In this document: piece after piece, positions 24,801 to 61,714 of the stretch
How positions within the stretch are numbered: position 1 is the first letter of the stretch
Layout: every line of letters starts with the position of its first letter
Origin: Ophelia neglecta
Taxonomy: Eukaryota
Length of the DNA: 64,000 bases
Direction of reading: 5' to 3'
NCBI GenBank assembly: GCA_965285935.1
Contig: OZ260661.1
Location: forward strand, 45,632,001 to 45,696,000
Notes under the pieces: model-generated
Databases searched by the model: none
The model's input: only the letters and a program-made list of their open reading frames with translations
Told to the model about the DNA's origin: nothing
Program-made: the position numbers and the translations under genes

Positions 24801-25956
24801 TAAAAAATAGATAGTTTTGAGTGCCGTAACAAATCAGGACGCGACACTCAGTTAATCAAGATGCTAGCTGATTGATATTTTCGGATCCAAAAACTTATTT
24901 CTGAGCATATGATATGAACCTACCATCATTCGGGAAGGGGAGCCGGCCCTGGCGGCGACTGAAACTCCTAAAAACTGATGATCTTTGATATCAGCATACT
25001 CATTTCTTATTAATGTGTTACCTGAAGATTGCAAACAGAAGAGCACTGAAGGGAAACTGGGAGAGGGTGAGAGATCGAATCCCCATATGCCCCAAGGCAA
25101 AAGATAGTCAATATCTATTATGCATTCAAACTATTCTCATAACAAAGATAGCTACGAAAGAGTTATAAAATAATATCATGCCTGTAGTGTCCAAGACAAT
25201 CTGACTACAGGCTGGATCTGAAAGGGTGTTGAGTGGACACATGTATATTGCTCCGGGAGACACTAAGCGTGGTTCTGCAGTCGAGTTGGCACGTGGAGCA
25301 CCCACCACCAGCCTATTTATATATGTATAAAAGGTTTTGAAAAAAGAATCATTTAAAAAATAATATCACACCTTGTTCAACATAAATAATTTTCCCTTAG
25401 GTGGTTAGGTTTATTGGTGTCTCAAATTCCAAGCATTCTACAATATATTTTTATTAAAGCTATACAGAAACGCATATTTATCAATAGAACATACTATATA
25501 AACTTATTTTCACACATGTGAACATGCAACAAAAAACCATACAACTGATGCAAATGTTCAAGGCACTGTCAAGCCGAGAAACCTTTGTTATTGTTTTCCC
25601 TTAAATGTTGAACGCAGTATTCATGAAAACAAAAATAACATAGTCAGCCCTAATTAAAAATACGACATTTTTTGATATCTCTTAATAAGAGGTTGAAAAG
25701 ACTGATACAACAGAAATATGAACGTTTTGAAATACTTGTTTTCACGCTTCGTCTCGGTCATCAACAAATTATTGTGTTTGTAAACTTACCACGAAGCTCC
25801 AGGAATCGTGTGAACGGCGAGAGAAAACCCCAAATAACTACCTGCTGGTCCCTTAAAACTCAGAGGAACGCCATAAAGATCAATATTGTATGCGTTAACA
25901 ACACAAAACAGTCCTAAAAGTATGGATACCCTCCACTGCAGGTGTATATAATTCAT
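15805..25956 (-). CDS. Integrin alpha subunit, alpha4/alpha9-like, paralog C (21 exons, ~1043 aa)
   Basis: Exons: 25956-25790, 25312-25182 (GC donor), 25021-24924, 24539-24309, 23985-23928, 23645-23559, 23367-23276, 23082-23020, 21452-21315, 21162-21060, 20893-20708, 20456-20241, 20111-19960, 18613-18470, 18372-17912, 17774-17594, 17453-17331, 17237-17136 (shifted donor, inferred), 16743-16657, 16401-16285, 15999-15805. TM LPLWVILVSIFAGLLLLIILIIVLVK; KVGFFRR tail ending YVSAVMKKT*. Confidence 0.9.
19270..19525. repeat. CAAGTCA-rich repeat array, likely MITE-derived (intron 13 of C)
   Basis: Repeated caagtcacac/caagtcaaac/caagtcaaag/ccctcaa units. Confidence 0.55.
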
Positions 25957-35600: not shown

Positions 35601-38600
35601 TTAACTAATCCGTAAGGCTCACCGTTAGTTCGCGCCAGAGCTTTGGGTTTGTTCGAATGCCAAGAGAACTTGAAAGTAACGGCAAAGCAAGGAACGGTTT
35701 TTCCTGAATCCAACACACACACTTTGTCCTCAGCTTTGATACACTTGTCTTGGAGATCCACGGTTGTCACTATTGTGATGACTGGCCGAGAACGAACGAC
35801 AAACACTTGGTCCGAATCGTAAGCTCCGACACCAAAATCTACTCGAAGGCGAATCATGGTGGCAGTATTGCCCATTTAATAAAGAGATAATTTTATCAGA
35901 TCAAATTCCTTTGATCAATGTATACCAACAAGTTCAAGAGTTTTAAACTTTTTCAAGTGAAGCAGAATGAGAATGTCCTAGCTAAAATGTTACAATACTT
36001 GTCAGCTAGCGTTACCGTCGTATTCGTTTCCATCGATGTCAAATGCTCCCGCCATCCCATATCCTAGACCACGTGGCTGTCCTGGCAGCTCATTGGCTGA
36101 TATTCGCTGAGTATAGTTGATGGATACGCCGTTAGGGGAGCCATTAAACACATACACAGCGCCACGATTGTCATTCTCATAAGGAGCTGCTACTACTATG
36201 TCTGAGTGAGGATAATGAATTAATTGTTGCAATAAGGACTCTGGCTGCCAGATAAAATGATACTGTCTGAAGTTATGACAACCTTTTTACTGTCCGAAAT
36301 ATACAGAAACCATACTTGTGCAAAATTATTATAGTACATGTGTAAGCTATATTGTAAATGTTTACTGACCGTTGTAACCATCGCCATCCAAATCTCCAGC
36401 GGAAGAGATAGTAGTCCCAAATCTGCTAAACTGTTTTTCGTGCTTCAATTTGGGTCCTTCTCTTAAGTCACCCTGTTTAAAAGTAACTCATTTGAAACCG
36501 TCTTTATAACACGATAGCTAATGTTTATAAAAAAAATCTCTTCCTTCACTATTTAAAACACATTCAGATTTCAAAAGAAAGCAAAATGTGCAAACAGTAG
36601 AAGAATTACATGTATATACATGTACATGAATGAGAAATTGCGAGGTAGTCCCTACCGTAATTTAATGTATTTGGAAGAGTAGAGTCCTACGCGAGCTTGG
36701 GTTTACCTGAGTGCCATAATACACGTACACCAGACCCTCGTCTCCTTGGCGAGTCGTGTAGAATGGGGCTCCAACAAAAAGGTCGTCCCAGCCGTCTCCG
36801 TTTACATCAACAGCCAATAGAGCAGATCCGAAACCAGACTTGTACTGGATTAAAAACAAATATTTAAAGTGAACTTACATATACTGAACAATAACCCGTG
36901 TTATGCGCTATGTTCTTTGAACACGATATTTTAAATTAATCATATAATTATGCTAAAGTTTAAAGAATTAATTGAAAAAAATGTCTCGTTATTGAATAAA
37001 AAGCTAAAGTGGCAGTGAACTTACTTGTTTTGAAGTTAATCGTTTTAATATGATTGAATTGTGGCCTTCAACTTGGTAAATGATAACCTAAAACATTGAT
37101 TAGGTTATGACATATAATAGATTATAATATCCTTATATTTTCTTAATATGCACATATTACATGTATATTCTGAACGAATTGTATGATAGAACTTCGTCTC
37201 AAATTGAACAGATCATATAATAAATGCGTAGAAGCGATTGTTCTAGTGACATATTTAAAATAATAGATATTCATATTGTCCGTTTCAATCTATGACTTTT
37301 AATCCAACCTACTAGACAAAATTGCAACTGGAATGTTTCCCGAATACTGAATCAAATTTTCTATATCACCAAACAAAGTCCCAAGAGACATTCCCCTATA
37401 GTCAAAGATGATAGTTAAGCTTCCAGACACTGTTATGTCATAGGTAGTTATTTTTTTTGTAAATACATTGTAGGTAAGTTGTCCCTAAATCGACCTTTTC
37501 ACTGAGCCGCGCCAGTGTCGAGCTATGCTTCTTCCCAAGTCCAATTTTATAATATAGTAAATAAAGCATTTCATTTCTATCTTTCGTATTTGATTTGTCT
37601 TTTAAGTATATCTTGGAATTAAACTTTGAAAATACATGAATTCAGATGAACCATTATAACTAGCTAATCTGTGGTATCTTGTCTCGCTGCAGTTTACTTA
37701 CCTACCTCGACTGCGACAATGAAACCATTCACTTATTGGGTCGCGCATACCAGTGACAAAAAAATGGTTCAAGCATACGCCCTATTACAAGACCGGGCGA
37801 AGGGAGAGAGGGGGGGGGGGGGCATTTATTAATCAGGATTGCGTTGAAGGGGGCCCGCGCAGTTGTTAGTTTCCATCCTCTTCAATAAGAGAAATATTCG
37901 CGCTGGGAGAATTCCCTTTTTTATATTCAGTTTTCAGTTTCTACCCTCAAAAGACATTAACCTCTCAAGTTTATCTTAAGATGATTTTTTTTGCTAGCTA
38001 AAGTCATTCCGAGTATATCGACCAAATTTGTTTCCACTACAATTGTGTCTATAGATTAGATGCACTGGACTCAAATATTTAGAATTTTGGTACATTTGGA
38101 AATTGAATAAATATACTTGTCCTTCCTGATTGTAGTTCGGTGCTCCCGCCACCAAATTTAAGGAGTCTTTTGTACCGCTCAAAATATTGCCGGTCGTGAC
38201 TGCGTAGCCTTTTCATTGCAAAGAGAAATAAGCACATCGAAGACAAGTTGTATTGTGATGTTTGTAAAAGTAGTTCCGTTGCTTAATAACTGAGCAAGTC
38301 GATATTCACTCCAGGCATGAGAAGAATCGCACCTTAACATTAAATCAGTCAAATTAATTTCACTCCTTACCGAGGTTGCTATTCTCCTGTACAGAATATG
38401 TAATGTCGCTGATAGAGTACCTTTTGGCGGTATTTGGCATGTACACGTCTACCCCACCTAGTAGTAATACATTAAATCCATAAACAAGCAATCGGAAAGT
38501 ACAGGTAAATTTATTGAGAGGAAATGATAATTATTACAAGTTTGATCAATCACTTATATTATATATATATAAATGAGAGAGTTGAGACCGGGGAGCTATG

Positions 38601-41600
38601 ATTTATTATTTATTTGTATATTATTTTAACAGTGGGTCTGGGCGTTCTATATCATATTTAGAGAATCACAGCGAAATATTTTAATGGTTATCGAATAATG
38701 AGCTTAGGCCTTTGCTTATCTAATAGCGAATTATGTGGTTTGATTTTAAACATATAATTTAAAAAAAGGAATAATACCAAATCTGGTTCCTTAATTAAAC
38801 AATAAAACATGTTCAGACGAATTATGTGTAATAAATTTACTTGTAATTTTTGGTAATGTAGGCCTATCACCAATTTGCGATGCTAATGTTCGGGGATAAG
38901 CAATTAATAGATTCTCATCTCCACCCCATCCAGAACAAAAAGTGTCAGTTTATCTATAAAAAAGATATATTGAGAACAGAACATTACCAGATGTATCCAA
39001 GGATCTCTGTGGAAGACCCGGCCTGCCAATGTATATGTTATTGTCCTGAAAAATAAAGTATCACTAAGTAGAGTTTAGTATGGCGATAAAACCCCATGGT
39101 GGTGGGTGAATAGCGGCGGTTGGTGGGGGACGGGGGCGGGGACGAGGGATCTGGAAGTACGATTCACGCCAAAAAAAATTATTTTAATCTGGCGTGAAAA
39201 ATGAATATACCGAATGGAAAAGGTACCATTAATTAACAAGTAGGCCAGAGAGAAAGTGTTCGCTCGACTACCTCCATAACTCCAAATCCCCCGCCCGCCC
39301 GGCTAAAGATTTGTCCTTCTAAATGTAGTCGATAATACAACATGTCATTGTTTACTGTATCTTGGGATACGGTATACTCTACTTTTGCCACATGGACCGC
39401 CATTCCTGACAAAGAAAACCCCTGCAGCCGTTTGTACTTCATGGAATTGTTGTAGTAAATGCGTTGGACAAAATCTGAATCTGTGAAAAACCGGATGGTT
39501 TTAGTAGTTCCTCCTTGCAGGTGTCCCTCGTGTACGTAGCAGATTCCATCGGGGGTCGACTCATTGTAATAGTTATTCCATGCGGACTGCAAGTTGTTTC
39601 TCCACAGATGTCCACACGCCTGTGATGGAGAGGGACAGGCATCATATCAAAACTCTCAATCATATATATCAGGTTACATGTGTTCATGTTACTTAATCGA
39701 ACATTAATGAAACTATATTGTTGCGCATCGACCAAAAAAGAGAAAAGAGTATTCAGATAACTTAACTGTTGTAGGGCGGACGAAGGCCAACCCTCGCTTG
39801 TACCAGAACAGCTGGTCCGTAATTTAGACCTAATATGAAAACTTGAAACTCACTATCATGCGTGAAGGAGAGCCGGCCCTGGCATCGACAGATACCCCTA
39901 AAAACTGACCATCTTTAATATCGGACCACGCCCTGAATCTGTATGTGTTACCTGTATACCCAAACAAAGAAATGATGGAGATAAAAACAGCAATTCAAGC
40001 GGGTTATTCCTGCTACATATAAGCCAATATAGGAAAGGACACCCTCCCGTGCATGGTACGGATTATTTAGGTAAAACATGATTATTTTTCAGGAAATTTT
40101 TTCAAGAAAACCTTCTTGTTATAAAAAATTAAGAAAGTACATTTTTCTTTTAATAGTCTCGATCCACAGTAATATGTTATAAGACTACTGCTTTTCACCT
40201 CGTGGGTCAGTGTATATGGGTTTGCAAATATTTACTGCGGGCTTTTGGAGCCTGACTGGTTTTTCTTGTTCACTTAAAATACTAGGAACCACAATGATTT
40301 CCTTTAAAAAAAGTCTATGCCAAGTATCGAGGGAAGGCTATTTTTTCAACATATGCAGATACATCCAAGTGTAATTTGTGTATTATCTATTTTTTTGGCA
40401 GGGTATGATTTACATACAAAAGAGAGTCACAGAGACTGAAAGAGAATGAGAGCGAATTCAATTTAAAATGAAAAATCAAAATGACTTGACAGCCCAAAAG
40501 ATATAATATGGATTATTTTACTAGGCCAGTTACAAATATTTATCAATTATATACATGCCTGTAGTGTCCAGGACAATCTGACTACAGGCTAGATCTGATA
40601 GGGTGTTGAGTGGACACATGTATATTGCTCCGGGAGACACTAAGCGTGGCTCTGCAGTCGAGTTGGCACGTGGAGCACCCACCACCAGCCTATGAGTATA
40701 ATATATTAACAAATTAAAATACACAATTGTTTGGGTTAGGGTTTTTCTAGAAATTTTACTCATGGGAAAGTTGCAATTCATTGTTTGACAACCACCACCA
40801 CCCCCTTCCAGACTCACAAGAAATGACAACACCCAAATATCTGGACGCACATAAAAAATTAAACCCGTCAATCACGGGCATATATAAGTTGTATTTCAGC
40901 ATCCGGATTAGCAGGGACACATGTTCAAAATAAATCCCTAAATAGACCTTATTTAGAGAGAACGTATTTTGAGCCACATATTTTGGTTTAAATTGGGTTG
41001 GTCATATCTGCAACGTTAGTCACCTTATAAAATTACAAGTACATTCCGTTGGCTAATCTTATGCCCATCTGAGCTGGTTAGCAATTTTGTTCACAAATGT
41101 ATGTGCCAGTGAAACGCCCACGCAGTTAAAAAAAAAATCTGCATGCACTGACACTATTTTCGTGACACCTGTTTAAAGAGACGAACTTCTTTAAAAAAAT
41201 CAGTCCAGGTTGGGACAGGGTATCATCTGCGGTGATTAAAGTATGTGCATCATTTGCTTCATCATTTGATCATTGAATATTTGAGCGAAAAGGTTACCAA
41301 AGTGCCTCCAATCTTTAAAAATGGCGATCATGCAGCTTACTCATTACCGATCAGTATGTCCGGTATACTCGTTTTCTCTAAAATTTATAATCGTAATATG
41401 TATACACCAGTGCTAAACTTTCTTGATAGGCCTCTGTTCCGCATCAGCCTTTGGTTTTCGTCAGGGCCACTCTACAAATATGGCTCTGATCATTTTGGTT
41501 GAGAAGATTTAAGCTTCAATAGATGATGGTGACTGCAAGATATTAGGCTTTTTCTGCTCGATTTTTCTGTAAGTTTTTTGACACTGTCCGTCATGCATTA

Positions 41601-42397
41601 CTTTTTGAGAAGGCAAAGCACTATTATGGTATTAGACGATTTGCCCTTCCATGCCTTAAAAGCTACATTCATAACCGATCTCAATACGTTTACTTTGATG
41701 GGTCTCAATCGAGGTCCATGGCCTCGAGTTGTGGAACAAGGGTTCTTTCTAGGTCCCATGTCTTAATATTAATGACACGGCAAATGTACATGTAACTGAT
41801 ATTCTTGTCAAGATATTGTTTGCTGATTATTCCAACGCATACATCAGAAGCAGAAAATCGTGATCAATATACAATACCATTTCTTAATGAAGAGATGGGA
41901 AAAATAACACTCTGGTTAGAAGTTAATAAATTAACCTTAAATGTTAACACAAGAAGCCATAAAATGGTTTTCGTTGGAACTAGAAGTAGATGTTATATAA
42001 ATAAACAAAGTAAGCAATGGGTTAATTTCTAGGAATATTAACATTATTGGCTTTAAAAAGGAACAGATGATTGCGGGCTTCCCGGCTAAATATTCAACTT
42101 ATACCCGGTGTTTTGTCTTATTATCTTTATAAAAATTTGAACGATAATGATGCCCCCCCCCCACACACACACACAGAATACCCATCCCACCTGACGATAT
42201 ATTATGAAAAAGCCATGAGACATATATACTCACCACGAATTTCCAGGAACTGTGTGAAAAGTGAGGGAAAACCCGAAATAACTTCCGGCTGGCCCTTTGA
42301 AATTCAGAGGAACACTTTTGAGATCAATATTGTATAATTTAACAAAGCAAAACAGCCCTAAAAGAATAGTGATCCTCGATAACTGTATACAGGCCAT
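29646..42397 (-). CDS. Integrin alpha subunit, alpha4/alpha9-like, paralog B (21 exons, ~1058 aa)
   Basis: Exons: 42397-42234, 40689-40559 (GC donor), 39951-39854, 39619-39383, 39045-38988, 38457-38371, 38208-38117, 37087-37025, 36844-36707, 36472-36370, 36201-36016, 35838-35623, 35371-35220, 34987-34844, 34728-34268, 34109-33917, 32216-32091, 31219-31091, 30595-30509, 30276-30160, 29840-29646. Same phases and motifs as A; KVGFFRR tail; no stop or frameshift found. Confidence 0.92.
32286..32448. mobile_element. Tc1/mariner-pogo-type MITE (intron 16 of B)
   Basis: TIRs CAGTGAAACCTG...CAGGTTTCACTG flanked by TA on both sides; internal AGACCAC repeats; second copy at 61053-61230. Confidence 0.85.
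41210..42010 (+). mobile_element. Degenerate CR1/L2-group LINE RT fragment in intron 1 of paralog B
   Basis: Frame-broken remnants KVPPIFKNGD, GHSTNMALIILVEKI, FDTVRH, QGFFLGP, WLEVNKLTLNV. Confidence 0.7.
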
Positions 42398-47505: not shown

Positions 47506-48760
47506 TCAACTTTCCTTTTTCTTCATGACGGCGCTCACGTACTCTTCCATGACTGCTTTTTCCTCCTGTGGAGTTTGGGGGTTAGTCTGTTCGAGTTCCT
47601 TTTCATGATCATGCTCCACCTCGTCCCCATGTTTAATACAGGATTCTTCCTGGATCTTGCTCTCCCTGACCGCCGCAATGCCCTCGTGGCGATTGCGGCG
47701 GAAGAAGCCCATCTGCATATGATACAGGTAGAGTGAAGGTTGGAAAGTCGTTGGTATCTACTATCTTTTTAATATACATTTTGTTATTTTTAACATATAA
47801 TGTGCCCATTTAAAGAATGATTCATACGTGTCTGTCTCGGAAACATGGAGCGTATGCAGCTCATGATATAAATGTAAGTTTACTGTGTAAAAGGAATTAT
47901 TGACATAAACTGACCTTCATGAGGACAATGATAAGAATGATAAATAGTATAATTCCTGCGACACCGCTGACTATTATCACCCACCAGGGCACGCTCTGGT
48001 CTGCAGAGGGGGGAAGAATTGATGTCTTGATCTGAATTGATAGTTGTAGAAACACACGGCAATTATTGGCAAGTAGTCCACCATGATTTCATATAATAGG
48101 GGCAACAATTTAGGACACGTGTTACCTCAGTAGTTGACCTTCTAAAGATAGACTGATACATGAAGACCATTATTGGGAATAAGTTGTGAAATGAATTCTC
48201 AATGCTAAATGGTGTTTAAATCAGGGGCCATGAGGCCAAATTGGCAATTTAAGCATCTTTTAATTAGTTGTTTGAATTATATTTAAAAGTCGAATTGAGT
48301 TCGGAATTGACATGTCAATTTTGAACTTAATTTTGCATGAGGCAACTAGATGATGCCATAATCACATTACTTAGAGAATTTAATGGGCCCCCAGGCTTTT
48401 GTTTTTAATAAATAATACCAAATAGAGTGCAGAAGAGATTAAATGAGCCGTAAATCCGCTAATTTATGCTACTTTTTGCTATTCCCTGATTATTTTCAGC
48501 TTTTTTTAGAAAATAATATTATTGAACTATTGCCTCTTATCACTCATGGACATATTCCGACAGTTGAAAATTACTTTTTAAAACTAACTAACTTAAAGAC
48601 ATAGTTGCGCTAGAATGCTCTACTTGGGTTATGACTCCTGTAAAGTGACCTTAAGACTCATTTCCGAATAAAGGTGTTCATATATTCTTTGTTTGTTTTA
48701 GAAGGTCAACTAAGTATCAACTGTTTAAATTGGTGCACCTATTTTATGAATTTTGGAATC

Positions 48761-48791
<31 letters not shown>

Positions 48792-51700
48792 ACTCATATG
48801 ATCCCATGTATTAACGAATGGCGTCCGAAAATGTCTGAAAATATTTCTAATCAAACACATTTGTATATAAACAAATAACAGTTTAATTAATATGTTTGTC
48901 TGTTTAAGGTAGTACCTGAATATTCTGACACAGTCCACAGTCGCCTCTTCCTATATACCTGGGTAACTTGATATCGGACACGAACGTAAAACCAGTTTCG
49001 CTCTATATATAGACAACGAGATGTACTATCCATTAGCACTTTATACTTAAGAAAACACATGTTTCAAAAGAATTCCATGTCCGGTAAATGGACATGGAAC
49101 TTTGTGCCGTACGCTGCAAGTTAAATATCTACCTATGTGAAAGCAGAATATTAAATTGAGGGCTCAGAGACAAAGTATGCTTTGTAGCAAAATGATTAGT
49201 TTTGAGATGCTATTGAGTGATATTCTTCTTACGACTCTAACGTAGTACATGTACCTGTAATTTATCAGTTGGGGCATACAGAAAAGGTTGCATCATTATT
49301 ATTACTTAAATCTAATATGTATTATTTCTGTAGTGAGTACACCAAGTGAATAAATAGAATACTAGCATTTTTATACATATGTTAGGTTATATTCGACGGT
49401 ATCGGATGTCATGCGCGTCTCGGTGCTTTGTATGGGCATTTGACCCGTATCCAGGCAAACAATTTACGTTTGAGGCTTAAACAAAAAGTCTATACAAGTT
49501 TTAACTTGTATTAAAACTAAGCGCTTTTTAGTAAACTATATTTTAAAACTAATTTCTTGGTGCAAAGATGCTTCTGGTAAATAACTATATCTTTAGCATG
49601 CGCTCCTTGTCTCGTTTAGACAATCACATGTTTTACGAGTTATAATTATTACAACCCTGTCATATTAGAAAATAAGAAAGAAAATCTCATTTGAGTTAGA
49701 TGTCAAATAGCATACTTTGAATCCAAGCCCATGAAATACGGTTTCATCCGAAGGTATTTCCACATCCACGTTATAAGTTATGGTGACTGTTTCCTTGACT
49801 GCAAGATTATGAATCTCGCACTCCGCGTAATCGTTAGAATTCGCCTGAAAAAAAAACAGGAATTTAAACCAAACTTCAGATGGTGTAGTAAAAGAATTCA
49901 GTTGGATTCTAGAGCAATCATCAGTTCCAAATCGATGTCGCAACGTTAATTGTCGCAAAAATTGCCAGAAGACAAACACTAACTACTAAACAAAGCCATA
50001 TTTTATACAATACAGAAATCGTATTTCATATCAAATGAACCTGGTATTGTAAATATGGGTAGTGTACTAAGACTGCAATATGACAATCAGATTCACCAAT
50101 TTCGGTGTTTACGGTGGGGAGGGCCCTGCCAAATATATATATATATTGATATGTGAGCAAAGAGTAGTAGCTAAACATGCTCTAAAAAAATCTTGGCCCC
50201 ATGACACTTCCCTGATATGACGTCAAAAGACTCAAAAGTGTTATGGAATGTGTACCATTTTCGAGCATGAGCATTTAGGACAGGCAAAATCGGGATTTGT
50301 CAAGTATTTCCAGAAAAATATATGGAAGAATTTGGCAGGAACTAACGTTAAATAATTATAATACAATTTTATAATTGCGATAAAAAGAAAAACATATATT
50401 TGATTTCATTGATTATATCGCAAAAATATGCAACAAAATAAGTATATTCCAGAATCTATCCGTGAATGGCATGGCCGAAATAAGATCTGCCGGATTGAAT
50501 CACCATTTTGTATAGGTAATACACGTGTCTGATTGGCCTTAACTCTCCCGCTGACCAAAGACAATAATTTTATCATAATAATGTAAATAGTTATTGCATT
50601 AAAATGGAACTCAACTCCTCACCAGGTTGTGATTTCGTGGTTGTTTGTTCAAATTCTGACTTTGCACAGGTTCGGTTTGATGTTTCCCATTGCCGTTTTC
50701 TACAAATCGACAACTGCCGAGTTTAACCCCACGGAACCCTTTTGAGACCTACAAAGAAAGTTACTAGTCATCACACTGACTGCTTTTCACGGTACTAATA
50801 AATTAAAACACAATTGAAATAGCAAAATCAAGGTATTATTTCAATGAATATATTTCCTATAATGATTAAATACAAAGCAAGCTATGTAATTGGTAAAAAT
50901 CAACTAAGCAGAAGAAAAGCACCTGTAAGCCAGAAATATTGAAGACGATGTCGCTATAGAGGTCAACAATTGGCAGACGAATGAGTACGGTAAAATTTGG
51001 AGCCAAACCAGGCCCTTCATTTCGGACGTCAATCACGTGCTTTGCTCTTTGTAAACCCTTCCCCGAAACCCCTTCCGCGGTTGTCGCTATGGCAACTAGC
51101 ATATCGGGGTTAGAAAATCTAGGATGCAAAACAATCATCTTCAAAAATAATATCCTCCTAATCAAACATGTTATATAAATGGGTGCTGAAAACAGTCGAC
51201 AAATACGAACGATCCGGTCCTAAGTTTAGATTGAATAAAGCGATATTCTAGCCGGATATGTGTTACAATATAATTACCCTTTTGCTAGTAGGCTAGCCTC
51301 GTTTATGGCCGGGATTATCACTGTGACGTTGTTGTTTTTCAGTTCCTCCTCTGTTTCCGTTGATCGAGTGCTGACAACTGCTGTAAACCTCAGGTCGTTT
51401 GGCGCCAGTTTTTCAGAACAACACACGACGAATGATATTGTCTGGGAGGAGTTGGGAAGCATTGGATTTCCTGTATCACAGGAAAATACTTCAAAATCAG
51501 TCTCCTTGTCATTACTCCCCTTGACACAAGATTGAGATCGGTATTGGGAAACTGTGATCCCTTGAGTAAATAGAAAATCCAGCCGAGAATTATAAGCACC
51601 ATCTTCTCCATTCAATATTTCGATGTGAAATAGTACCGGGTGCTGTTGTCCAATCACGTACGTCGTAGCATTGGCCATCATCTCCACCGCCAAATCTGTT

Positions 51701-54700
51701 CTGCAGATTAAATCACGGCATTTCTTGCAGAAATGCATCTAGCGAAATGAAAAAGGCCACATCAAAGGTTAGAGACAATAAATGGCATTATGAAATGTTT
51801 TTTAAATTTACTTATTATATATAGTATAATAATATGATGTTTATATTAACCTCAGTAACCATTGAACCAGATTGTGTCTGATTGATGATCGGAGCCAAGC
51901 CGTACGGATTGTCTCTTCTTAGCTCCTCGCTGTCATTGTCAAGTGAGTAGCGTGTTGTTAAACGGATCGGCCTGATCTTATCTACAGTGTTCTTCTGCCA
52001 ATGAAAAACTAAAAAGGTTTCGGGTGCATACATTTACCTTGTTTATTCCTTTTAGTTTATTGATTCTCAGGAAAGACTACGACAAAGGCAGAATCAAGTT
52101 TACTGTAGTTTCTGAAAGCTACATTAATAAACAGAACACAGACAAAGGGATGAATTATCATAAAATGTCGTCTGCCTTTGAAAGGTCCTAAATCATATTA
52201 TCAAAGTGAACTAGTGTTGTACACGCGCTGTACAAAGCACTAAATATATTCGCTATGCTGTTCAACCGAATGTTCTCAAGTACGTAACTTACTGGCACTT
52301 GGATTATAATGTTCTGTTTTGTTTCCTCCTGTAGTTCCAGGACCTCCCGACCTCGCCCTTCTCCCGTCGCGTTCCCGTGATTGATCAAACGAGCTCTGTG
52401 TGTAAGATCTTCGTAATCGTCCATAATGGTATCCCAGTTTATTGCTGAGAGAGGGGAAATATTATTTTTAGCTTCTACAGTTTATTCCTGAATCTTCCAA
52501 TTGTACTGAAGGTTAATAGAATAAGTTATTAAATTAGTGGTTCACCGTGTGTTCGCGCCAGGGCCTCGGGTTTGGAAGAATTCCATGCCAACTTGAAGCT
52601 AACCCTAAAACAAGGAACGCTGTTTCCTGAAGACAATACACACACGTGTTGCTCCGGCTTGACGCACGTGTCTTGGAGGGTAATGGTTGTCATTATTGTG
52701 ATGACTGGTCTTGAACGGACAACAAACACGTGGTTCGAGTCGTAAGCTCCGACACCAAGATCTACTCAAAGAGACACGCTATTTAACATGGGTTTTGACA
52801 TTTTTTTATTAAACCTGGATTTCAACATTTTTGCGAAGTTGGACGAAAAAACAATTCGATAACATGGAATTGGTCTAATTTTATTTTTACAAATTTGATA
52901 TTCCGAAATATAATAACACAAGTTGGTAACATTTTATACAAGTATCTGAAGTGAATCTAGATGTGATTGTGAAGCTAAAAGTGCACCTGAATGTGGATTC
53001 CAATCTTATTTCACTTTGATTAGTTTTAAGTGGTCTAAAAATAATAACCAACACTCCCCTAGCATACAAAAATAATACGAGTTGAGAGTATTTAGTGGAA
53101 TCATGTAATTTCGATTGAAGTTCAGATATATTTTGTATATAAATCAAATTCTTCTGATATATATCAACACATTCAAATGAATTACTTCCGACTTTTAAAG
53201 TTTTCGAGTGAAGTAGAATAAACGTGGAATGTAACAAGCAGACTTTATATTACCGTCATATCCGTTTCCATCTATGTCAAATGCTCCCGCCATCCCATAT
53301 CCTAGACCACGTGGCTGTCCTGGCAGCTCATTGGCCGATATTCGCTGAGTATAGTTGATGGATACACCGTTAGGGGAGCCGTTAAACACATACACAGCGC
53401 CACGATTGTCGTTCTCATAGGGAGCTCCTACTACTATGTCTGAGTGCGGATATTGAAAAAGTGGTTTAAAGGTTGACGATTCCTGCTGTAAGATTACATT
53501 TAATATGAACTTTAGTACAGCATTCTTGACGTCTGAAATATTTATAAACATCTTGAAGAGTTTCCTGAAATGGTAACTTCTTTTTATGAAAATGCAGTGC
53601 AATAAACATGAAGGGATGTCAGAATTGGTATTCCCGTGATTTAATTATTTAATTGACAAAATCAGGACCAAAATTATGATAGCATACTATAGCATATTAA
53701 TCAAATAATAAGTGTAATGACCGTTGTAACCATCGCCATCCAGATCGCCTGCCGAAGATAGTGTTGTTCCAAATCTACTGAACTGCTGGTCGCTCTTCAG
53801 CTTGGGTCCTTCGATCAAATCACCCTGTTTAAAGAAAACTTACAGTCTTGTTTACTTGACGGCTAAAGGGGACAAGTCAAATATGATTCCTCTTATGTTT
53901 TAAACAATTTTATTAATCTCGAAAGAAAGCAAAATGTGTAAACAATTTATATAAACTTAGATAAGAACGACACAACGTTTAATTACGAGTTGATCCCTAA
54001 CGTGATTTGATGTTTTTGCATGCATGGTAGAGAGAACTGTTCAACAGGACTTTACCTGAATACCATAATACACGTGTACGAGACCCTCGTCTCCCACGCG
54101 AGTCTGTTGGAATGGGGCTCCTACAAATAGGTCATCCCAGCCGTCTCCGTTGACATCAACAGCTAACAGAGCAGACCCGAAACCAGACTTAAACTGAATT
54201 AAACAAACATAATTAAGATTTTTTCTTTAACTTTAAGATCACTGGCCTTAAAAGGACAAACACTTCTTGGATATTAGTAATAGTAACTATGCATAATTTG
54301 TTTTCTACTTTTGAACGTACATTTCTGGGTAGTGTATGGCTCCCCCTTCAATCATTGGTAGCCTATGTCTAATGGACCCAGAGTCAACTATTTAACAAAG
54401 CTGTGTGTCATTTGGCAACATACGCTACATTCTGTCTCGAATGCCTGACAAGCATTATCCTTCGCGATCTCCATACACTTAATTTTGAAAGAATTTTCCT
54501 AAGTTATTTTTTGTTTTCCTGTCCTTAGATAAATTATTTGTGATGTTAAATTATAATTTTTCTAAATGAACGTTCTCGTGCAACTGTGTGCTAACCATCT
54601 CAGATACAAATTTTGGAAGAGACTATTATACTATTTGGCTTGGTTTTGCCGGCCGACTAAAAATAATGTACAAGCTTTTAAAAATATACAATACACAATA

Positions 54701-57700
54701 TTCACGCTTTCTTATAGACAAGAAAATAGCCCTCTGTATTACACATAAAACACTTCGTACACTTGTAGGAGTAGGCCTACATGTATGCTTTGGTTCTCGT
54801 TTGAAGCGTACACCTTCGTATCCTCGGCCACGATAGTTACGTTTGACTCTGGATTACTAAGGGTTTCGTTCTTCCATAGCTCACTTGGCTGTATTTGAAT
54901 CTGATATTAGCAATATTTTGTATTGGTAGTCTACCTTTGGCCTATTAATGTCGGTTGGGACACAGTTTCAATATTTGTCAGGGCTGTATTCAATCGTTCA
55001 GGGCCTGGTTCGGTGGTAGGTGGAAGCAAATGTTGTACAAACAGTCAAATGGTTTGGGAATAATTTCACTGAATATTAGTCGATGACGGAATAGTTATGG
55101 AATAGTTTCACTGAATCGTTATCTATAACACGCAAATATGTTATTATATTGTCTTAATTGTCTAAATGTAGAAAACTCGATCCGGGGGAAAATCAGTATA
55201 TCAAGGATTTGCGCAGTGGCTGGCATATGTTTTTTCTGCAGTTCGGCTATGGTACAGGACTTTCGTCTCCCAAAAATATAGCACCTCACATATAAAGTTA
55301 TAAACTGCTCTGATTGATAGAAAACCGATGTTGACAGCAATTGTTGGCGCTGTCTGAATCATGGTTCATGGTATTCAGTCAATATAATAATAAATAGTCG
55401 TACTTTGAACTCTGCTTAAAGCGTCAATCAAATCAGATATACCGATAATGTGGCAAGACGTCGGCCGAGTAACAAACTTGTGCCTCTAGAGAAATGACTG
55501 ATTATTAGCATATAGGCCCTATAGAATCTACAGGAAATTGTCTTTTAAATCTTGTAATCCATTATAATTATATACGTATCGTTTGACTTACTTGCGTTGA
55601 TTTTAATCGTATCAAAATGGAAGCATTATGGACCGAATTAAGGACCGCCAGTTGGTAAATGGTTACCTAAAACATTATCAAGGTTAAAAAATGTCAAAGA
55701 TAATTAAATATTCCTCTTTTCGAAAAATTAACACAATGAATACATTATAGAATATAAACGCATTTGAATTAGGCATATAATCTTAACGTTGATCGAATGC
55801 TAGTGTTAACATTAAAATGTATGATATTTATATAGTTCAGTTTCAATCTAAGACTTTTAATCCCACATAGCTAGACCAAATAGCAACAGAAATAAAATTT
55901 TGTGCAAAAGGAAACAAATTTGGAGAAAACTACTTGCGCCATATTAGAAATAGGATCCTATTTTGTCACTAAGTCTTGTGTCCCAAAAAACGAGTCATGC
56001 CATGAATTATTTTGATCATATATTTCATCTTAACTTAAATCTTTTGTTTAATATATTATTCCATGATTCAATATTCAGGCTTTTGATTATGAATAGTTAT
56101 TCAATATATTTGTGTCTATCATATTAGCCCTATTATATTCATCCATGGTCGGCCTATCCGCCAGAAGGCGGCCTCGGTATGGTTTATTTGTTTATATATT
56201 CAGTGAATTTCTATATTCCGGGTTGCCCAATCACTTCGAAACACTCATATCCAAACCAATTGTCTCTTCTATCAGAGTCATTGCCAGATACTCGTTCTGC
56301 GAGACTATTTAACTCGGGCGTTGCGCAGGTTGGATTCGCTTTCGCGTCAGGTTAAAGTCAAACGCGAGTCAGTTGACTCGTAAAAAAATCATTGGGAGTC
56401 AAGAATCCAAACCAGAGTCAATTGACCAGAGTCAGCTTAATAACATGCAGAATACTCATACTGCGAGTCAATTGGACTCGAGTATTGCACCAGGTCGACT
56501 CGTCTCAGCGTCTATCCTGAATGGCCTCGAACCGAACGAGAGTCAATTCACCGAGCACGCGCAACTGCTTTCTCTCAAGGCGGGAAATTTTGTGGCGTTT
56601 GGATCATGCGGTCGTAAAGATCATTGTAAGTACAACTTAATATTGTAAACCTTAGGTCAAGTATTGCGATATTGGCGTGCTTCTGATTTTATGGGAATTC
56701 ATATATCAGCATGCTTTAACATAAAATTAGAATATGGAAGAAACGAGCCTAAAATTGAAAAAAACAAGTAAAGTGTAAACTCTGTTTAGACGGTGTGCAA
56801 CCCTCAGCTCTAGTTCAGATGAGTGCATTTTCGAAGCAGGTATCCTGTTATATTCTATCTATTTTTGCAGATGTGTTGGCTCTAGGATAACAGACATCAT
56901 TTGGTTACGATCTGGAGGATTATGTGAACCATGCTGGCATAACATTGTTGTTTATAAAACGTTTATGATATATTATGACCTAAACAAATCAATTAATTTC
57001 TGGCGCCATATCTGTATTGGCCCATGAGATGCTGCAGATTTTCATACAGTGCAAATTCATAATATTCTTTTTAAAGAATAAGGAAATGTTTACAGTTCAT
57101 TGATAGTTAAAATTACAGAGGTTTGTTGGCATTGTTGATTCCTTTCGGGTTCAGTAGCAGCACCTGTGACCCTGTTGCAGACGTCCTCACTCCGATGAAG
57201 AGTCCAAATGACTCTGCTAAAGAGTGAAATGAATGTTGTCAATGGTCAAAATGTGTTTTATATATATTTTTCATAAGTGTCAAAATGACCCTGGTTAGAG
57301 TCAAAATGACCCTGCTTAAAAGTCAAAATCACTTTTAAGAGTCAAATGACTGTGGTGTAGAGTCACTATATGTTTTATAAGAGTCCCAATGACTCTGGTT
57401 AGAGTCTAGTTGACTCTGGTTAGGAATCAAATTGACTCTATTAAAAGAGTCACTATAGAATTGGCGGGGGTCAAAAAATGGACCCTGGCACAATGTAGCA
57501 ATAAGCTTGTTAAACTCGCTCGGGAAGACACAAGTGTTATACTCAATCCTGATGCAATGCTTTAAGTTACCAATGGACACAGCCACTACAAGTTTCGTAA
57601 GTTGACTTCAACAGTAAGGATCTCAAGTAGGTTAACAGAACTCGACTATTGTGTATAAGACGTTAATTTTATAATCCTATATATTTCTCTTTCGACGCAA

Positions 57701-60700
57701 TGCGCTTTTAGTTATAGAACCCAGAGAGCTAAATAAATCGTATAATTTGTATATTAATGATAATAATAATAATAATAATGGTATAGCGTTAGCTTTGTCA
57801 ATTCCGTACATATGTAACAAACTTATTTCTATTACAATTTTGTCTAGGTTTAGCCTTAGATTGACTGAACTATACACGTTATTGTTTTAACATTTTTGGA
57901 GTATCCTTTTTGACATTAATTTATATACTTGTCCTTCCAGATTGTAGTTCGGTGCTCCCGCCACCAAATTGTAGGAGTCCTTTGTATCGCTCAAGATATT
58001 ACCAGTCGTGATTGCGTAGCCTTGGCGACAATTAGAGACATAATGAAGTAAATTCACGTAGTATCATGATGTTTCTGCTGATAAATAATACTAAGTAGAC
58101 AAAACAAAAATATTAAAGGAATAAAAAAAATTGTCATTTGAGCAACGAAATAGTTTTTTTGCTGCTTACCCTATTTAGTCCACTTTTTATATTGCTAACT
58201 TCTCTATCTCCGCAAATAATAAACTCGTCTCGGTTTTTACTCTACCCCTTATTTAAATCCCTCTGAAAGGATGGTTTATTATTGTTTCGAGAAAAAATTA
58301 TGTATAGTGGAATGCCAGCTTCAGACAACAGCGTGTCTTTTCAGTGCAATTGCATGTTCATTTGGTTTGATAATGCACAGGGCATTATCAAACATACTAC
58401 TTCGTTGTACCAGATTGACCAACAAAATTGAACGGAATTTAGACAAAAAAAATCCTTCGAACGACAGCGTTCGCTTAGAAAATATTCTCGGTTCTACCTG
58501 GCGTCGAGCCTTATCTGGCTGCCATTCGAGGGGTTAAATCAGTAAATAAAACATATCTATATTAGCTATCCGTCTTAAGAAGATTTAATGCATCTGATTT
58601 TGTTTTCTTACCTAGGTAGCTGCTATTTTCCTGCGCCGAATACGGTATATTGCGTATAGGGTATGGGCTCCGAGCAGGCCTAAAATCTGGTGTGTACACG
58701 ACTATGCCTCCTGGTATACGTATAAATAACATTAACATTCACAAGAGAACGGTATTTGAACGTAAGTGAAAGGAAGGTTCAGATTGATTGTCAACTCTTG
58801 AATAAGTATGTTGTGGTTTATTTTGTTAATAGATAATTTTGCCCCTTAGTTAATATTAAATTATAATTAAGTCACTAAGCTGTAGTTTTTACTTGTTACC
58901 TTATCTTTTTCGATTAGGCCTAGCGATTTCGTTATTACAGATCACTTTTAACCATGACAGTGTTTTTAAATGAATTTAAGTAATAAGGATTACCAGAAGC
59001 TTCAGTGGAAGGCTGCGAATAACCTGGTCTACTGATGTATATTTTATCGTCCTGTAAATTGAAGTTAAGTTTCAGACAGTGGATCATCACCATATAGCAC
59101 TGCCGTAGCCATACCTTGGGAATGGACTAATGTTCACCCTTTAAGGGATCTGGGAGAATTATGCCCAAATTTGGATTCTTTGTTAAATGGCTGAGACAAC
59201 AATTTTGCACTGAATTTCGGCAAATAAACTATTGAAAAAGTGACTTTCTTTAACAGGTTACCAAGGAGAAGGGCGCGTTCGAATGCCTCGATAAAGTACC
59301 CCCCACCCTCAACCCCTAGTAGAATTTTGGACCCGGCCCATGTGTATAGTCGCCAATGATCTTTTAAACAGTAAGTATAATAATAGCGAGATATACTATA
59401 CTTTAGCCACATGGACTGCCATCCCAGACAAGTCAAATAGAGGTCCATACTTTGAGAACCGGATTGTTATGGTGTTCCCTGCTTGCAGATGTCCTTCGTG
59501 TATGTAACAGATTCCATTTGGGGGCATGATGTCGGTTCTTTTGTGTACAATTTGAAAGTTGTTTCTCCACAGATGTCCGCATGCCTGTAAAATCGTTTGA
59601 AAATTCTAATAACCTATATTAATAAAATAACGAGGTCCAAGCCTCTGTTATTGTGCAGAAAAATCAGGATTAGCGTCTCAGGGTCTTCAGTTTTAATGAG
59701 TGATAGCTAACATATCGTCCCTGTGCCATTTTGTTTTTGAGCCTCGACGGGTCATTACAAAGAGCAAAACTGAAGAAAGAACAGATAGCTTTGGGAGGCG
59801 AACCCGTCATCTTATCGCCTGCGAAAAAGCTGTAACATCGCTTGCAAGCCCTGCGTCTTAACCATTCACCCGAAGGGGCCGGTGGCGGACACGTATGCAC
59901 TTAAGTGATAGAATGGTCACACAGAATACGGAAATGTTATTGACTTTTTTTTATGTAGGCCTACCTCTGCTTTTTGAAGAAACTATCCGTTAGATACTTG
60001 AATGCGTAGCCAGAAAATTTATCTTATACTATTGCACATATAAAAACATGCACGATACCGTTATAGGCCTATGGTGGTCATGTAGTGTAAGTATTCTCTC
60101 ATGGGTGTGCAGTGGTATCAGCAATAAACGATATTATATCTAAACAGAACCTAGTGGTGGTGGGGTGCGTTGGGGTGAAAGAGGGGACGAATATGCTTAA
60201 ATTTTAAAGTTTTTTAAATAATTTTTTTTTCTATTAACCAGGGAGGGCAAGGCTAGGAGGAGGAAGGTTAGGGAAGGGTGCTGATAGAGCAATTGAGGGG
60301 AGTGTCTGAAACATAAACCTATGACTGCGGATGGTTTGGGGAAGAAAGGGGGGGGGCTCCATTGACGGGGGTTTAAATGATTAATAGATGAGATGATGAA
60401 TTGGGGGGAGGGCGTATAGTGATGTGTAGGCATTAAGTTGTTGCTGAGAAAGAAAGTGCTGCTAAGAGACTCAGGGGATTGAAAGTGAACTAAGCTAACG
60501 GGTCTTTCTAGTGGGCCAAATAAAGAAAGGGAAACATATGGTGATGCCAATTATAATACTGTGGGGGAGATAATCAGCTCCTTTATGCTAACCTCGGGCC
60601 TGTTGTTAGACATTGATATGCGACCAAGGTTTTCTCTCAAATATTGACACACGACACAATTCAATTCCTCGACCCTATAATTATGACACTGACATGTAAT

Positions 60701-61714
60701 TATTGACACAAGACACTAGTTTGTACTTGAATATTGACAAACCACCGTTGGACTTCCTTAAGGTTTACACAAACTTTAGTTTGCTGAAACATTGGACTGC
60801 ATCCGTCATTCATTATCGAAATAAACTAGAAACTCACTATCATTCGGGAAGAGGCACCGGATCTGGCGTCAAGCGAAACTCCTAAAAACTGACCATCTTT
60901 GACATCAGCCCACTTTGAATTGTCAGAATTGCCTGTAAGTATTGTTTAAATTACAGAAGAACAGCATAGGAAATAGAAGGAAACTGAAGAGAAATGTAGA
61001 CAAACTGGTCACAGTTAATAAATAAAATTCAAAATGTGTTGATAGCCCAATACAGTAAAACCTGCCCTAAAGACCACCTCTATAATTAGACCACCTGCCA
61101 ATTCAGACCACTGATATGAGGACCATGCTGTATGTTATCATTGTTAAATAACCTGTCTAAACAGACCACTTTTGAAATCAAACCAATATTTTCCAGTCCC
61201 TTTGATGGTCTTAATTCACATGTTTCACTGTATATACAATTAGGGACTTTTTTTTTATAGATTTTTGGATCCAGCCAGCTACAAAGAATAAGATATTTCG
61301 AAGTAGATATCTTGCCATACCTGTAGTGTCCAGCGCAATCTGACTACAGGCCAGATGTGATAGGCTGCCGAGGGGACACTTGTATATCACTCCTGGGGAC
61401 ACTAAGGTCGGCTGTGCAGAAGAGTTGGCTCGGGGAGCACCTACCAGCAGCCTACAAATACGTATATTAAATAGATTTTTAAACATTGTAATCCGTCCAG
61501 TAATTTATTTCATTGTGTGTTGAACATTTTAAGTTACCGACCATGATGAATTTCCGGGAATCGTGTAAGCGGCAAGAGAAAATCCCAAAAAACTTCCTGC
61601 TGGTCCCTTGTAACTTAGGGGAACACCATAAAGATCAATATTATAGGCATTAACAACGCAAAACAGTCCAAAAACAATGGCTGCCCTCCTCCACTGTATA
61701 GTACAAGCCATCAT
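47506..61714 (-). CDS. Integrin alpha subunit, alpha4/alpha9-like, paralog A (21 exons, ~1055 aa, no I-domain)
   Basis: Hand-spliced exons with GT-AG introns and frame preserved: 61714-61542, 61451-61321, 60932-60838, 59584-59402, 59051-58994, 58710-58612, 58020-57929, 55666-55592, 54193-54056, 53824-53722, 53439-53254, 52761-52546, 52444-52293, 51994-51851, 51738-51278, 51118-50923, 50748-50623, 49844-49716, 49002-48916, 48031-47915, 47712-47506. Signal peptide then YNID; FG-GAP repeats (LLVGAP, VAGAP, FVGAP, VVGAPYE); Ca loops DVNGDG, DLDGDG, DIDGNG; RSRPVI thigh start; TM VPWWVIIVSGVAGIILFIILIIVLMK; KMGFFRR tail. Confidence 0.93.
56310..57490. mobile_element. Probable non-autonomous DNA transposon with subterminal GAGTCA/TGACTC arrays (intron 7 of A)
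   Basis: Dense GAGTCA/GACTC repeats at both ends (56360-56550 and 57200-57475) around AT-rich filler; true termini not resolved. Confidence 0.5.
58253..58538. mobile_element. Possible piggyBac-type MITE (intron 6 of A)
   Basis: TTAA-bounded, imperfect inverted ends ttaaatccctctgaaagg / ccattcgaggggttaa. Confidence 0.4.
61053..61230. mobile_element. Tc1/mariner-pogo-type MITE, same family as 32286-32448 (intron 2 of A)
   Basis: TA|CAGTAAAACCTG...CATGTTTCACTG|TA; internal sequence colinear with the other copy. Confidence 0.82.

What the first reader, a model, noticed from the sequence alone, without database searches (positions are those of the whole stretch)
58612..59584. Hypervariable, indel-rich beta-propeller loops (exons 4-6, 8) inside an otherwise conserved scaffold
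Seen: between invariant anchors ACGHLWRN, PxGICYxHEGH, TIRF and LSGMxxHVAK the loops differ almost completely. First loop: NFQIVHKRTDIMP (A), NLQSAWNNYYNEST (B), DFQKVFNNSIYDSWT (C), NYQVAFNDSSIDEWS (D). Exon 4 is 61/79/77/77 aa, exon 6 is 99/87/87/84 nt and exon 8 is 75/63/63/63 nt; all indels are in frame. Exon 11 is near-invariant. Known: blades 2-4 form the ligand-binding face of I-less alpha subunits. Inference: diversifying selection on ligand specificity, a variable-receptor-like use of integrins.
Basis: partly seen in the sequence, partly recalled or inferred. Interest (0 to 1): 0.8.

Follow-up and report, generated by a model that had tools for sequence, protein, structure and literature searches.

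The report
Variable binding-face loops in tandem integrins
Six neighbouring copies of an integrin alpha gene differ mainly in the surface loops that in human alpha4 line the ligand-binding groove. This is the usual way integrin paralogs diverge, and the loops change at about the neutral rate with no detectable positive selection.

Summary
The window holds four minus-strand paralogs (A to D) of an I-domain-less, alpha4/alpha9-like integrin alpha gene. They belong to an array of six. Genes A to E have 21 exons and intact reading frames of 1010 to 1058 codons. The stated anchors, loop sequences and exon sizes (exon 4: 61/79/77/77 aa; exon 6: 99/87/87/84 nt; exon 8: 75/63/63/63 nt) all hold.

I mapped the loops through an alignment to alpha4, an AlphaFold model that matches crystal structure 3V4V, and the alpha4beta7 structure paper. 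The exon 4 loops are the W2 beta2-beta3 and W2 beta4-beta1 loops. The exon 5/6 junction is the W3 beta2-beta3 turn (alpha4 Tyr187). The end of exon 6 is the W3 beta4-beta1 loop. All four lie on the ligand-binding face. The indels in exon 6 and exon 8 lie in beta3-beta4 turns on the opposite face.

Diversifying selection is not shown. Loop dN/dS is 0.39 to 0.74, and about 1 in the youngest pair. A nearly-neutral site model suffices (M2a versus M1a, p = 0.88).

The scaffold is only partly conserved, because thigh and calf exons are as divergent as exons 4 to 8. The best-conserved exons show a mosaic pattern typical of gene conversion. Gene D is an E/C crossover chimera.

This is an ordinary lineage-specific integrin expansion, a new member of a known kind.

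The parts
47506..61711 (-). Gene A: integrin alpha paralog, 21 exons, 1054 codons, intact ORF
   Evidence: Exon model and ORF check; Pfam FG-GAP, Integrin_A_Ig_1 and Integrin_A_Ig_2 hits on its exons
59402..59584 (-). Gene A exon 4 (61 aa): W2 beta2 strand to W3 beta1 strand; holds loops 1 and 2
   Evidence: Acceptor ttacag, donor gtatag; alignment; same-sample contigs cover it with 0 differences in run X1
59519..59560 (-). Loop 1 of A (14 aa): W2 beta2-beta3 loop, head end of the ligand groove in alpha4
   Evidence: Aligns to alpha4 mature residues 118-128, between model strands 108-112 and 131-135; loop role from PMC3255974
59432..59455 (-). Loop 2 of A (8 aa, against 24-27 aa in B-E): W2 beta4-beta1 loop
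   Evidence: Aligns to alpha4 mature residues 149-165, between strands 145-147 and 171-173
58994..59051 (-). Gene A exon 5 (58 nt): W3 beta2 strand plus the variable W3 beta2-beta3 turn (58994-59021), 4 residues longer than in alpha4
   Evidence: Aligns to alpha4 mature residues 176-190, including Tyr187/Trp188/Gly190; the turn is central to the ligand site
58612..58710 (-). Gene A exon 6 (99 nt): W3 beta3 strand, W3 beta3-beta4 turn with a 3-4 aa insertion (58658-58693), then W3 beta4-beta1 loop (58616-58645)
57929..58020 (-). Gene A exon 7 (92 nt): W4 beta1-beta2 and the conserved W4 beta2-beta3 loop; 77-90% amino-acid identity among paralogs
55592..55666 (-). Gene A exon 8 (75 nt): W4 beta3-beta4 hairpin with a 4-aa insertion (variable part 55616-55654); lies on the face opposite the ligand site
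29646..42397 (-). Gene B: 21 exons, 1058 codons; exon 4 at 39619-39383, exon 5 at 39045-38988, exon 6 at 38457-38371, exon 8 at 37087-37025
15805..25956 (-). Gene C: 21 exons, 1043 codons; exon 4 at 24539-24309, exon 5 at 23985-23928, exon 6 at 23645-23559, exon 8 at 23082-23020
1..11294 (-). Gene D, exons 1-14 (exons 15-21 lie 1.1-3.6 kb beyond the window start): 1036 codons; exon 4 at 9718-9488, exon 5 at 9335-9278, exon 6 at 9115-9032, exon 8 at 8400-8338. It is a chimera: E-like up to the end of exon 15, then C-like.

Best explanation
This is a tandem array of six alpha4/alpha9-class, I-domain-less integrin alpha-subunit genes, made by repeated tandem duplication and unequal crossing-over. 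Gene D is a recent E-5'/C-3' crossover product. Each copy keeps a complete, constrained integrin architecture: signal peptide, seven-bladed FG-GAP propeller with three Ca2+ loops, thigh and calf Ig-like domains, a transmembrane helix and a GFFRR motif.

The copies differ most in surface loops of blades W2-W3. In alpha4beta7 these loops build the alpha-side wall of the ligand groove. Each paralog, paired with a beta subunit, therefore most likely presents a differently shaped groove and binds different ligands; this step is inferred.

The loops change at roughly the neutral rate through substitutions and in-frame indels. The strands around them are under strong purifying selection. Several scaffold exons are additionally kept alike by gene conversion between copies. 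Exons 4-6 and 8 show no recent conversion. This is the usual mode of integrin alpha paralog divergence, not a special diversification mechanism.
For: Six colinear copies lie on one strand. A-E have intact 21-exon ORFs. Pfam finds FG-GAP, Integrin_A_Ig_1 and Integrin_A_Ig_2, and the Ca2+ loops, TM helix and GFFRR motif are visible in the exon alignments. The closest named relatives are alpha4/alpha9-like proteins.

Loop assignment rests on the alignment to rodent alpha4, which reproduces the Tyr187-Gly190 numbering. It also rests on the AF2 strand map (pLDDT 90.8), validated against 3V4V with TM 0.97, and on the published roles of these loops.

Loop dN/dS is 0.39-0.74, against 0.09-0.17 in adjoining anchors and 0.23-0.28 in the rest of the propeller. 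M1a places 32% of exon 4-8 sites at omega = 1, and M2a gives no improvement. Between D and E, top-face loops show 8 nonsynonymous to 2 synonymous changes, against 11 to 26 elsewhere (Fisher p = 0.009).

The nearest paralog pair changes from exon to exon: e2 B=C 0.97, e9 B=D 0.96, e11 A=C 0.97, e14 A=B 0.94. Exons 4, 5, 6 and 8 are uniformly 0.58-0.81. dS is 0.07-0.5 in exons 7, 9, 11 and 14, against about 1 or more in exons 4, 5, 6 and 8. The D chimera is shown by 91-100% identity to E, introns included, up to exon 15, and 92-98% identity to C after it.
Against: No expression data exist. No RNA run holds the locus, so none of the copies is shown to be transcribed or to pair with a beta subunit. 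Ligand-specificity differences are inferred from homology to alpha4, which is only about 35-55% identical even in conserved exons. Exon 4 alone finds no integrin in the PDB by sequence.

Selection tests use five paralogs with saturated dS in the loops, uncertain loop alignment and a mosaic history, so their power to detect omega > 1 is low. The loops were also delimited after seeing their variability. Low dS in scaffold exons whose flanking introns cannot be aligned could reflect synonymous-site constraint instead of conversion.
Confidence: 0.68

Rival explanations
1. Diversifying (positive) selection on ligand specificity. The array would be a germline-diversified recognition receptor set, for example for pathogens, gametes or allorecognition. 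Selection would keep the loops different and resist homogenisation by gene conversion.
For: Variable segments concentrate on the ligand-binding face. In the youngest pair, D-E, replacements cluster in these loops at N:S = 8:2, against 11:26 elsewhere. Scaffold exons are homogenised while exons 4-6 and 8 are not. Species-specific alpha-integrin expansions with proposed immune roles are described in oyster (PMC7390872).
Against: No comparison gives dN/dS significantly above 1. M2a versus M1a gives LRT 0.26, p = 0.88. Escape from conversion is also expected passively once sequences are too divergent to pair. There are only six genes and no cassette exons. About a third of the variable columns lie in beta3-beta4 turns on the opposite face. 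Calf exons 16-18 have equal or higher dN/dS.
Confidence: 0.2
2. Functionally redundant duplicates. The loops would simply be unconstrained surface that drifts, with divergence in expression and not in binding. Some copies, such as E with its truncated exon 17 and short tail, or A with its shortened loop 2, may be on the way to loss.
For: Loops fit the omega = 1 class. E has a 57-nt exon 17, against 123-126 nt in the others, and a shortened tail. The array shows ongoing birth by unequal crossover. There is no expression evidence.
Against: All five modelled copies keep intact ORFs of about 3.1 kb at gene-wide dS of about 0.5, with gene-wide dN/dS of 0.26-0.32. All loop indels are in frame. The anchors next to the loops are among the most constrained parts (0.09-0.17). 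The homologous loops are specificity determinants in alpha4.
Confidence: 0.1
3. Artefact. The apparent loops would come from mis-modelled exons, assembly errors or pseudogenes.
For: Models are homology- and splice-site-based only, without RNA support. A decoy exon-8-like piece exists in A.
Against: Exon boundaries are conserved with canonical AG/GT (or a conserved GC) in all copies, and every model gives an open frame. Independent contigs of the sample reproduce exon 4 of A with no differences.
Confidence: 0.02

Closest known systems
Vertebrate integrin alpha4 / alpha9 (ITGA4, ITGA9), e.g. alpha4beta7 headpiece PDB 3V4P/3V4V
   Same: No I domain. Shares the CGH(L/R)W(R/K)N strand motif at W2 beta2, seven FG-GAP blades with three Ca2+ loops, thigh and calf domains and a GFF(K/R)R motif. 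The variable segments align to the W2 beta2-beta3, W2 beta4-beta1, W3 beta2-beta3 and W3 beta4-beta1 loops that form the alpha4 wall of the ligand groove.
   Different: Only about 35-55% identical, and only in the conserved exons. It lacks the Cys pair of the alpha4 W2 beta4-beta1 loop. Its W3 beta2-beta3 turn is 4 residues longer and lacks the Tyr-Trp of alpha4. It is present as six tandem copies instead of single genes.
Drosophila alphaPS3 / alphaPS4 / alphaPS5
   Same: A small lineage-specific family of related integrin alpha genes, partly closely linked on one chromosome arm and of unknown ligand specificity (Hynes and Zhao 2000, PMC2180234). One hit in the word search is annotated alphaPS5-like.
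   Different: No orthology was shown. This array is larger (six genes), strictly tandem and co-oriented, and shows a recent crossover chimera and exon-wise conversion.
[quoted passage not shown]
   Same: A lineage-specific expansion of alpha integrins with high sequence variability, proposed to serve immune recognition (PMC7390872).
   Different: That paper reports neither tandem organisation nor loop-level analysis in the passages I read. Relatedness to the present genes was not tested, and the exhaustive search with exon 15 found no close relative in any named species.

Membership tests
Integrin alpha subunit | N-terminal seven-bladed beta-propeller built of FG-GAP repeats | tested here: met
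   Pfam FG-GAP hits on exons 9 and 11 of A (E = 6e-11 and 1e-5). Exons 1-12 align colinearly with the propeller of alpha4 and invertebrate alpha4-like proteins.
Integrin alpha subunit | Ca2+-binding Dx[DN]xDGxxD loops in the last blades | tested here: met
   Three such motifs are read directly in exons 9, 10/11 and 11/12 and are conserved in A-E. Metal binding itself was not tested.
Integrin alpha subunit | Thigh and calf Ig-like domains after the propeller | tested here: met
   Integrin_A_Ig_1 hits exon 12 at 25.6 bits, just under the 26-bit cut-off. Integrin_A_Ig_2 hits exon 15 at 54.7 bits, above its 24-bit cut-off.
Integrin alpha subunit | Single transmembrane helix followed by a GFFKR-type motif | tested here: met
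   Exon 20 encodes a hydrophobic stretch, and exon 21 begins with (V/M/G)GFFRRNRHEG in A-E.
Integrin alpha subunit | Heterodimer with a beta subunit at the cell surface | not testable with these tools
   No expression or interaction data. Folding the joined model with a beta subunit was left out.
I-domain-less alpha4/alpha9 class | No von Willebrand A (I) domain inserted between blades 2 and 3 | tested here: met
   Exons 4-5 run from W2 into W3 with only a 8-27 residue loop between them. No extra exon copies were found in these introns.
I-domain-less alpha4/alpha9 class | Closest similarity to alpha4/alpha9 rather than to the RGD-binding (alphaV/alpha5/PS2) or laminin-binding (alpha3/6/7/PS1) classes | tested here: inconclusive
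   The relatives used here were collected with an octopus alpha4-like protein as query, so the set is biased. Within it, vertebrate alpha4 and an annelid protein score best. The CGH-W-(K/R)N motif is shared. No phylogeny against all classes was built.
Diversified (variable) recognition receptor family under positive selection | dN/dS above 1 at binding-site residues | tested here: not met
   Loop dN/dS is 0.39-0.74, and about 1 for D-E. M2a versus M1a gives p = 0.88. Power is low.
Diversified (variable) recognition receptor family under positive selection | A diversification mechanism beyond ordinary paralogy (many genes, cassette exons, somatic change) | tested here: not met
   There are six genes in the array and eleven propeller-exon matches genome-wide. 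No additional exon 4-6 copies lie in the introns. The one extra exon-8-like piece, in A, carries a stop codon.

The most novel reading that the evidence does not exclude
The loop exons are kept different by selection while the scaffold exons are homogenised by conversion. The array would then be a germline-encoded panel of integrin heads tuned to different non-self or mating ligands, that is, an integrin-based diversified recognition system in an invertebrate.
Probability: 0.12. Interest if true: 0.7.

Novelty: new member of a known kind. Interest (0 to 1): 0.3.

Why it matters
If the copies are expressed, this array is a compact natural series in which the alpha-side wall of the integrin ligand groove varies on a nearly constant frame. 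Such a series would be useful for asking how loop length and sequence set specificity in alpha4-type integrins. It is also a clear example of birth by unequal crossover combined with exon-wise concerted evolution. It does not by itself show a new kind of variable receptor.

Tried and rejected
1. My first guess at exons between exon 4 and exon 7 was wrong. It rested on a GGG(F/Y)-containing open frame that looked alike in A and B, but C and D lack it, and alignment to alpha4 shows that exon 4 joins directly to the exon encoding the W3 beta2 strand.

2. An exon-8-like piece at 56979 in A was rejected because it has an in-frame TAA. The real exon 8 is at 55666-55592.

3. An unconstrained splice-site dynamic-programming search chose wrong frames for exons 15-21, so I replaced it with phase-checked boundaries.

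All later scripts used coordinates only.

5. Exon 4 alone, searched against PDB sequences, gave only chance hits.

6. The exhaustive protein search with exon 15 found only five weak relatives and none close, so no ortholog set for site models could be assembled.

7. Adding single exons as fragments to a homolog alignment misplaced the short exons. I used a local in-script alignment of the models instead.

8. The joined spliced proteins were not sent to any search or folding tool. Structure mapping therefore uses rodent alpha4 as a proxy.

9. Sequencing runs: no RNA run was found. Three DNA runs from one sample served only to confirm the assembly and to glimpse heterozygosity.

10. The model of the sixth copy, F, was not completed, because exons 6, 8 and 17 were not anchored.

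11. I did not try to identify the organism, because names are coded.

Full report
**Observation**

Self-comparison of all open frames shows four colinear copies in the window. A search of the whole assembly with one propeller exon shows six copies in a row on this contig and five more distant matches elsewhere. I fetched the flanks and built exon models from paralog alignments of every exon with its splice sites.

Genes A (61711-47506), B (42397-29646), C (25956-15805), D (11294 to 3.6 kb beyond the window start) and E each have 21 exons. Their reading frames are open and run to 1054, 1058, 1043, 1036 and 1010 codons. A sixth copy, F, is much more divergent. Its exon 4 still shows the same anchors with different loops, but I did not complete its model.

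- Exon 4 is 183/237/231/231 nt in A/B/C/D.
- Exon 6 is 99/87/87/84 nt.
- Exon 8 is 75/63/63/63 nt.

The stated coordinates 58612-59584 run from the end of exon 6 to the start of exon 4 of gene A. Exon 8 of A lies at 55666-55592. Contigs from the sample's own sequencing runs cover exon 4 of A without a difference.

**What the genes are**

Pfam finds FG-GAP repeats and the two integrin alpha Ig-like domains on single exons. The exon translations show a signal peptide, three Ca2+-loop motifs, a transmembrane stretch and GFFRR. No I domain lies between blades 2 and 3.

An exhaustive search with exon 15 found only five weak relatives. A word search seeded with the octopus relative returned alpha4, alpha9 and alpha4-like proteins. 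Our exons are about 35-55% identical to these in the conserved parts. I file the genes as integrin alpha subunits of the alpha4/alpha9 type, but the class assignment is not backed by a full phylogeny.

**Where the variable segments sit**

Exon 4 alone finds no integrin in the PDB by sequence. I therefore aligned the models locally with thirteen alpha4-type proteins. The alignment reproduces the published numbering of the alpha4 Tyr187-Trp188-Thr-Gly190 turn.

An AlphaFold model of rodent alpha4 residues 34-480 has pLDDT 90.8. It superposes on the alpha4beta7 crystal structure 3V4V with TM 0.97 and rmsd 1.7 Å, and it supplies the strand map. With it, the segments map as follows:
- The first exon 4 loop lies between W2 beta2 and beta3.
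- The second exon 4 loop lies between W2 beta4 and W3 beta1.
- The variable half of exon 5, with the first codon of exon 6, is the W3 beta2-beta3 turn.
- The end of exon 6 is the W3 beta4-beta1 loop.

Yu et al. 2012 (PMC3255974) state that these loops lie on the propeller face that binds the beta I domain and forms the ligand site. They state that the W3 beta2-beta3 turn with Tyr187 is central to that site. They also state that the W1 beta4-beta1, W2 beta2-beta3 and W2 beta4-beta1 loops differ greatly in length and conformation among alpha4, alphaV, alphaIIb and alphaX.

The 3-4 residue indel in exon 6 and the 4-residue indel in exon 8 fall in the W3 and W4 beta3-beta4 turns. By the alternation of loops in an antiparallel sheet, these lie on the opposite face. 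That placement is an inference from topology. The W4 beta2-beta3 loop, at the leg end of the groove, is conserved among the paralogs (exon 7).

One departure from vertebrate integrins is that the W3 beta2-beta3 turn is four residues longer here. It also lacks the aromatic pair and varies among copies, whereas it is the one well-conserved loop in vertebrates.

**Selection**

Nei-Gojobori estimates per exon give dN/dS of 0.06-0.73 for exons 4, 5, 6 and 8. That is no higher than exons 12-13 and lower than calf exons 16-18.

Restricted to the loop columns, dN/dS is 0.39-0.74 for the old pairs. The adjoining anchors give 0.09-0.17, the rest of the propeller 0.23-0.28 and the legs 0.25-0.40.

I wrote a codon-model likelihood script for exons 4-8 of A-E. 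It prefers a nearly-neutral two-class model strongly over one ratio (LRT 49.3), with 32% of sites at omega = 1. Adding a class with omega > 1 gains nothing (LRT 0.26, p = 0.88).

In the youngest pair, D and E, the top-face loops carry 8 replacement and 2 silent changes in 56 codons. The other 688 codons carry 11 and 26 (Fisher p = 0.009). This shows that the loops are where replacements are tolerated or favoured, at a ratio near 1.

Power is low: there are five sequences, silent sites in the loops are saturated, loop alignment is uncertain, the history is mosaic, and the loops were delimited after the fact. The honest reading is that the rate is neutral-like and positive selection is neither shown nor excluded.

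**History of the array**

Gene D is 91-100% identical to E, introns included, from upstream of exon 1 to the end of exon 15. From there to its 3' end it is 92-98% identical to C. This is the product expected from an unequal crossover between E and C.

Among the older copies the introns cannot be aligned, yet the closest pair changes from exon to exon. B and C are 97% identical in exon 2, B and D 96% in exon 9, A and C 97% in exon 11, and A and B 94% in exon 14. Silent divergence is 0.07-0.5 in exons 7, 9, 11 and 14, against about 1 or more in exons 4, 5, 6 and 8.

This mosaic is best explained by short gene-conversion tracts in the exons that are still similar enough to pair. Constraint on silent sites may contribute.

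The scaffold is not uniformly conserved either. Exons 1, 3, 12, 13, 16-18 and 21 have mean identities of 0.58-0.69, and exons 16-18 have indels.

**No special diversification mechanism**

A lenient search of the whole 134-kb region with the exon 3-9 peptides of all copies found no extra copies of exons 4-6 in any intron. The single extra exon-8-like piece, in intron 7 of A, has an in-frame stop.

**Comparison with what is known**

Lineage-specific small families of integrin alpha genes are known. Examples are the partly linked alphaPS3/4/5 genes of Drosophila (PMC2180234) and a species-specific branch of six alpha integrins in oyster with proposed immune roles (PMC7390872). That integrin alpha paralogs differ chiefly in the W1-W3 top-face loops is textbook structure. 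The present array is a further, well-preserved example with a clear record of crossover and conversion.

- The joined spliced proteins were not sent to any search or folding tool. Searches were done exon by exon by reference, and structural mapping used a fetched alpha4 protein as a proxy.
Coordinates were used instead.
- No RNA run holds the locus, so expression and splicing are unconfirmed.
- The alternative-haplotype contigs differ by 6-9% in the introns of A. They show three differences in exon 5 (one silent, Tyr to Phe, Asp to Gly) and at most one unlisted difference that could fall in exon 4. Most differences were not listed, so no polymorphism test was possible.

**Verdict**

Diversifying selection and a variable-receptor role are not supported by the tests that could be run.

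Noticed in passing
window 56909-56979 (minus strand), intron 7 of gene A: A decoy exon-8-like piece with a good acceptor. It begins like exon 8 of B-E but carries an in-frame TAA after 19 codons and has no in-frame donor. It is probably a decayed exon duplicate. Intron 7 of A is 2.3 kb up to the real exon 8, and the span from exon 7 to exon 9 is 3.7 kb, against 1.2-1.8 kb in B-D.
   Followed up: partly
window 40557-40558, 25180-25181, 10901-10902 (first two intron bases after exon 2 of B, C, D): The exon 2 donor is GC in B, C, D and E but GT in A. This is a conserved GC-AG intron within the family.
   Followed up: partly
window about 848-1993 (intron 14 of gene D): A tandem repeat with a period of about 417 nt, with copies 80-100% alike at the translated level. 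Intron 14 of D is about 3.5 kb, and most of it has no counterpart in E or C.
   Followed up: no
window about 61016-61283 (intron 2 of gene A); related piece at 32379-32456 in gene B: A very high-copy repeat. Summed contig depth is 10^5 to 10^6, against about 20-30 in the neighbouring sequence, with many rearranged joints. It is presumably a transposable element fragment.
   Followed up: no
window 49716-49742 (A) and 31091-31114 (B), end of exon 18: A and B stay open for 8 more codons past the donor position used by C, D and E, which have an in-frame TGA there. Exon 18 may therefore be 129 nt in A and B and 102 nt in C-E, or A and B may use the upstream donor too. This is undecided without RNA.
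   Followed up: partly
window 47506-47712 (exon 21 of A) and homologous exons of B-D: The cytoplasmic tail after GFFRRNRHEG is 50-60 residues long, with a C-terminal stretch conserved in A-D (acidic run, then a Tyr-containing motif before a Lys-rich end). E has lost most of it. This matches another note on this window.
   Followed up: partly
L007/L003, window coordinates -17025 to -17081 (gene E exon 17): Gene E has a truncated exon 17 (57 nt against 123-126 nt) with a strong donor, and a shorter tail. It may be a diverging or decaying copy.
   Followed up: partly
window 58994-59051 and flanking introns of gene A: Contigs of a second haplotype from the same sample differ by 6-9% in introns. 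They show three differences in exon 5 (59025 silent, 59038 Tyr to Phe, 59047 Asp to Gly). Heterozygosity at this locus is very high.
   Followed up: partly
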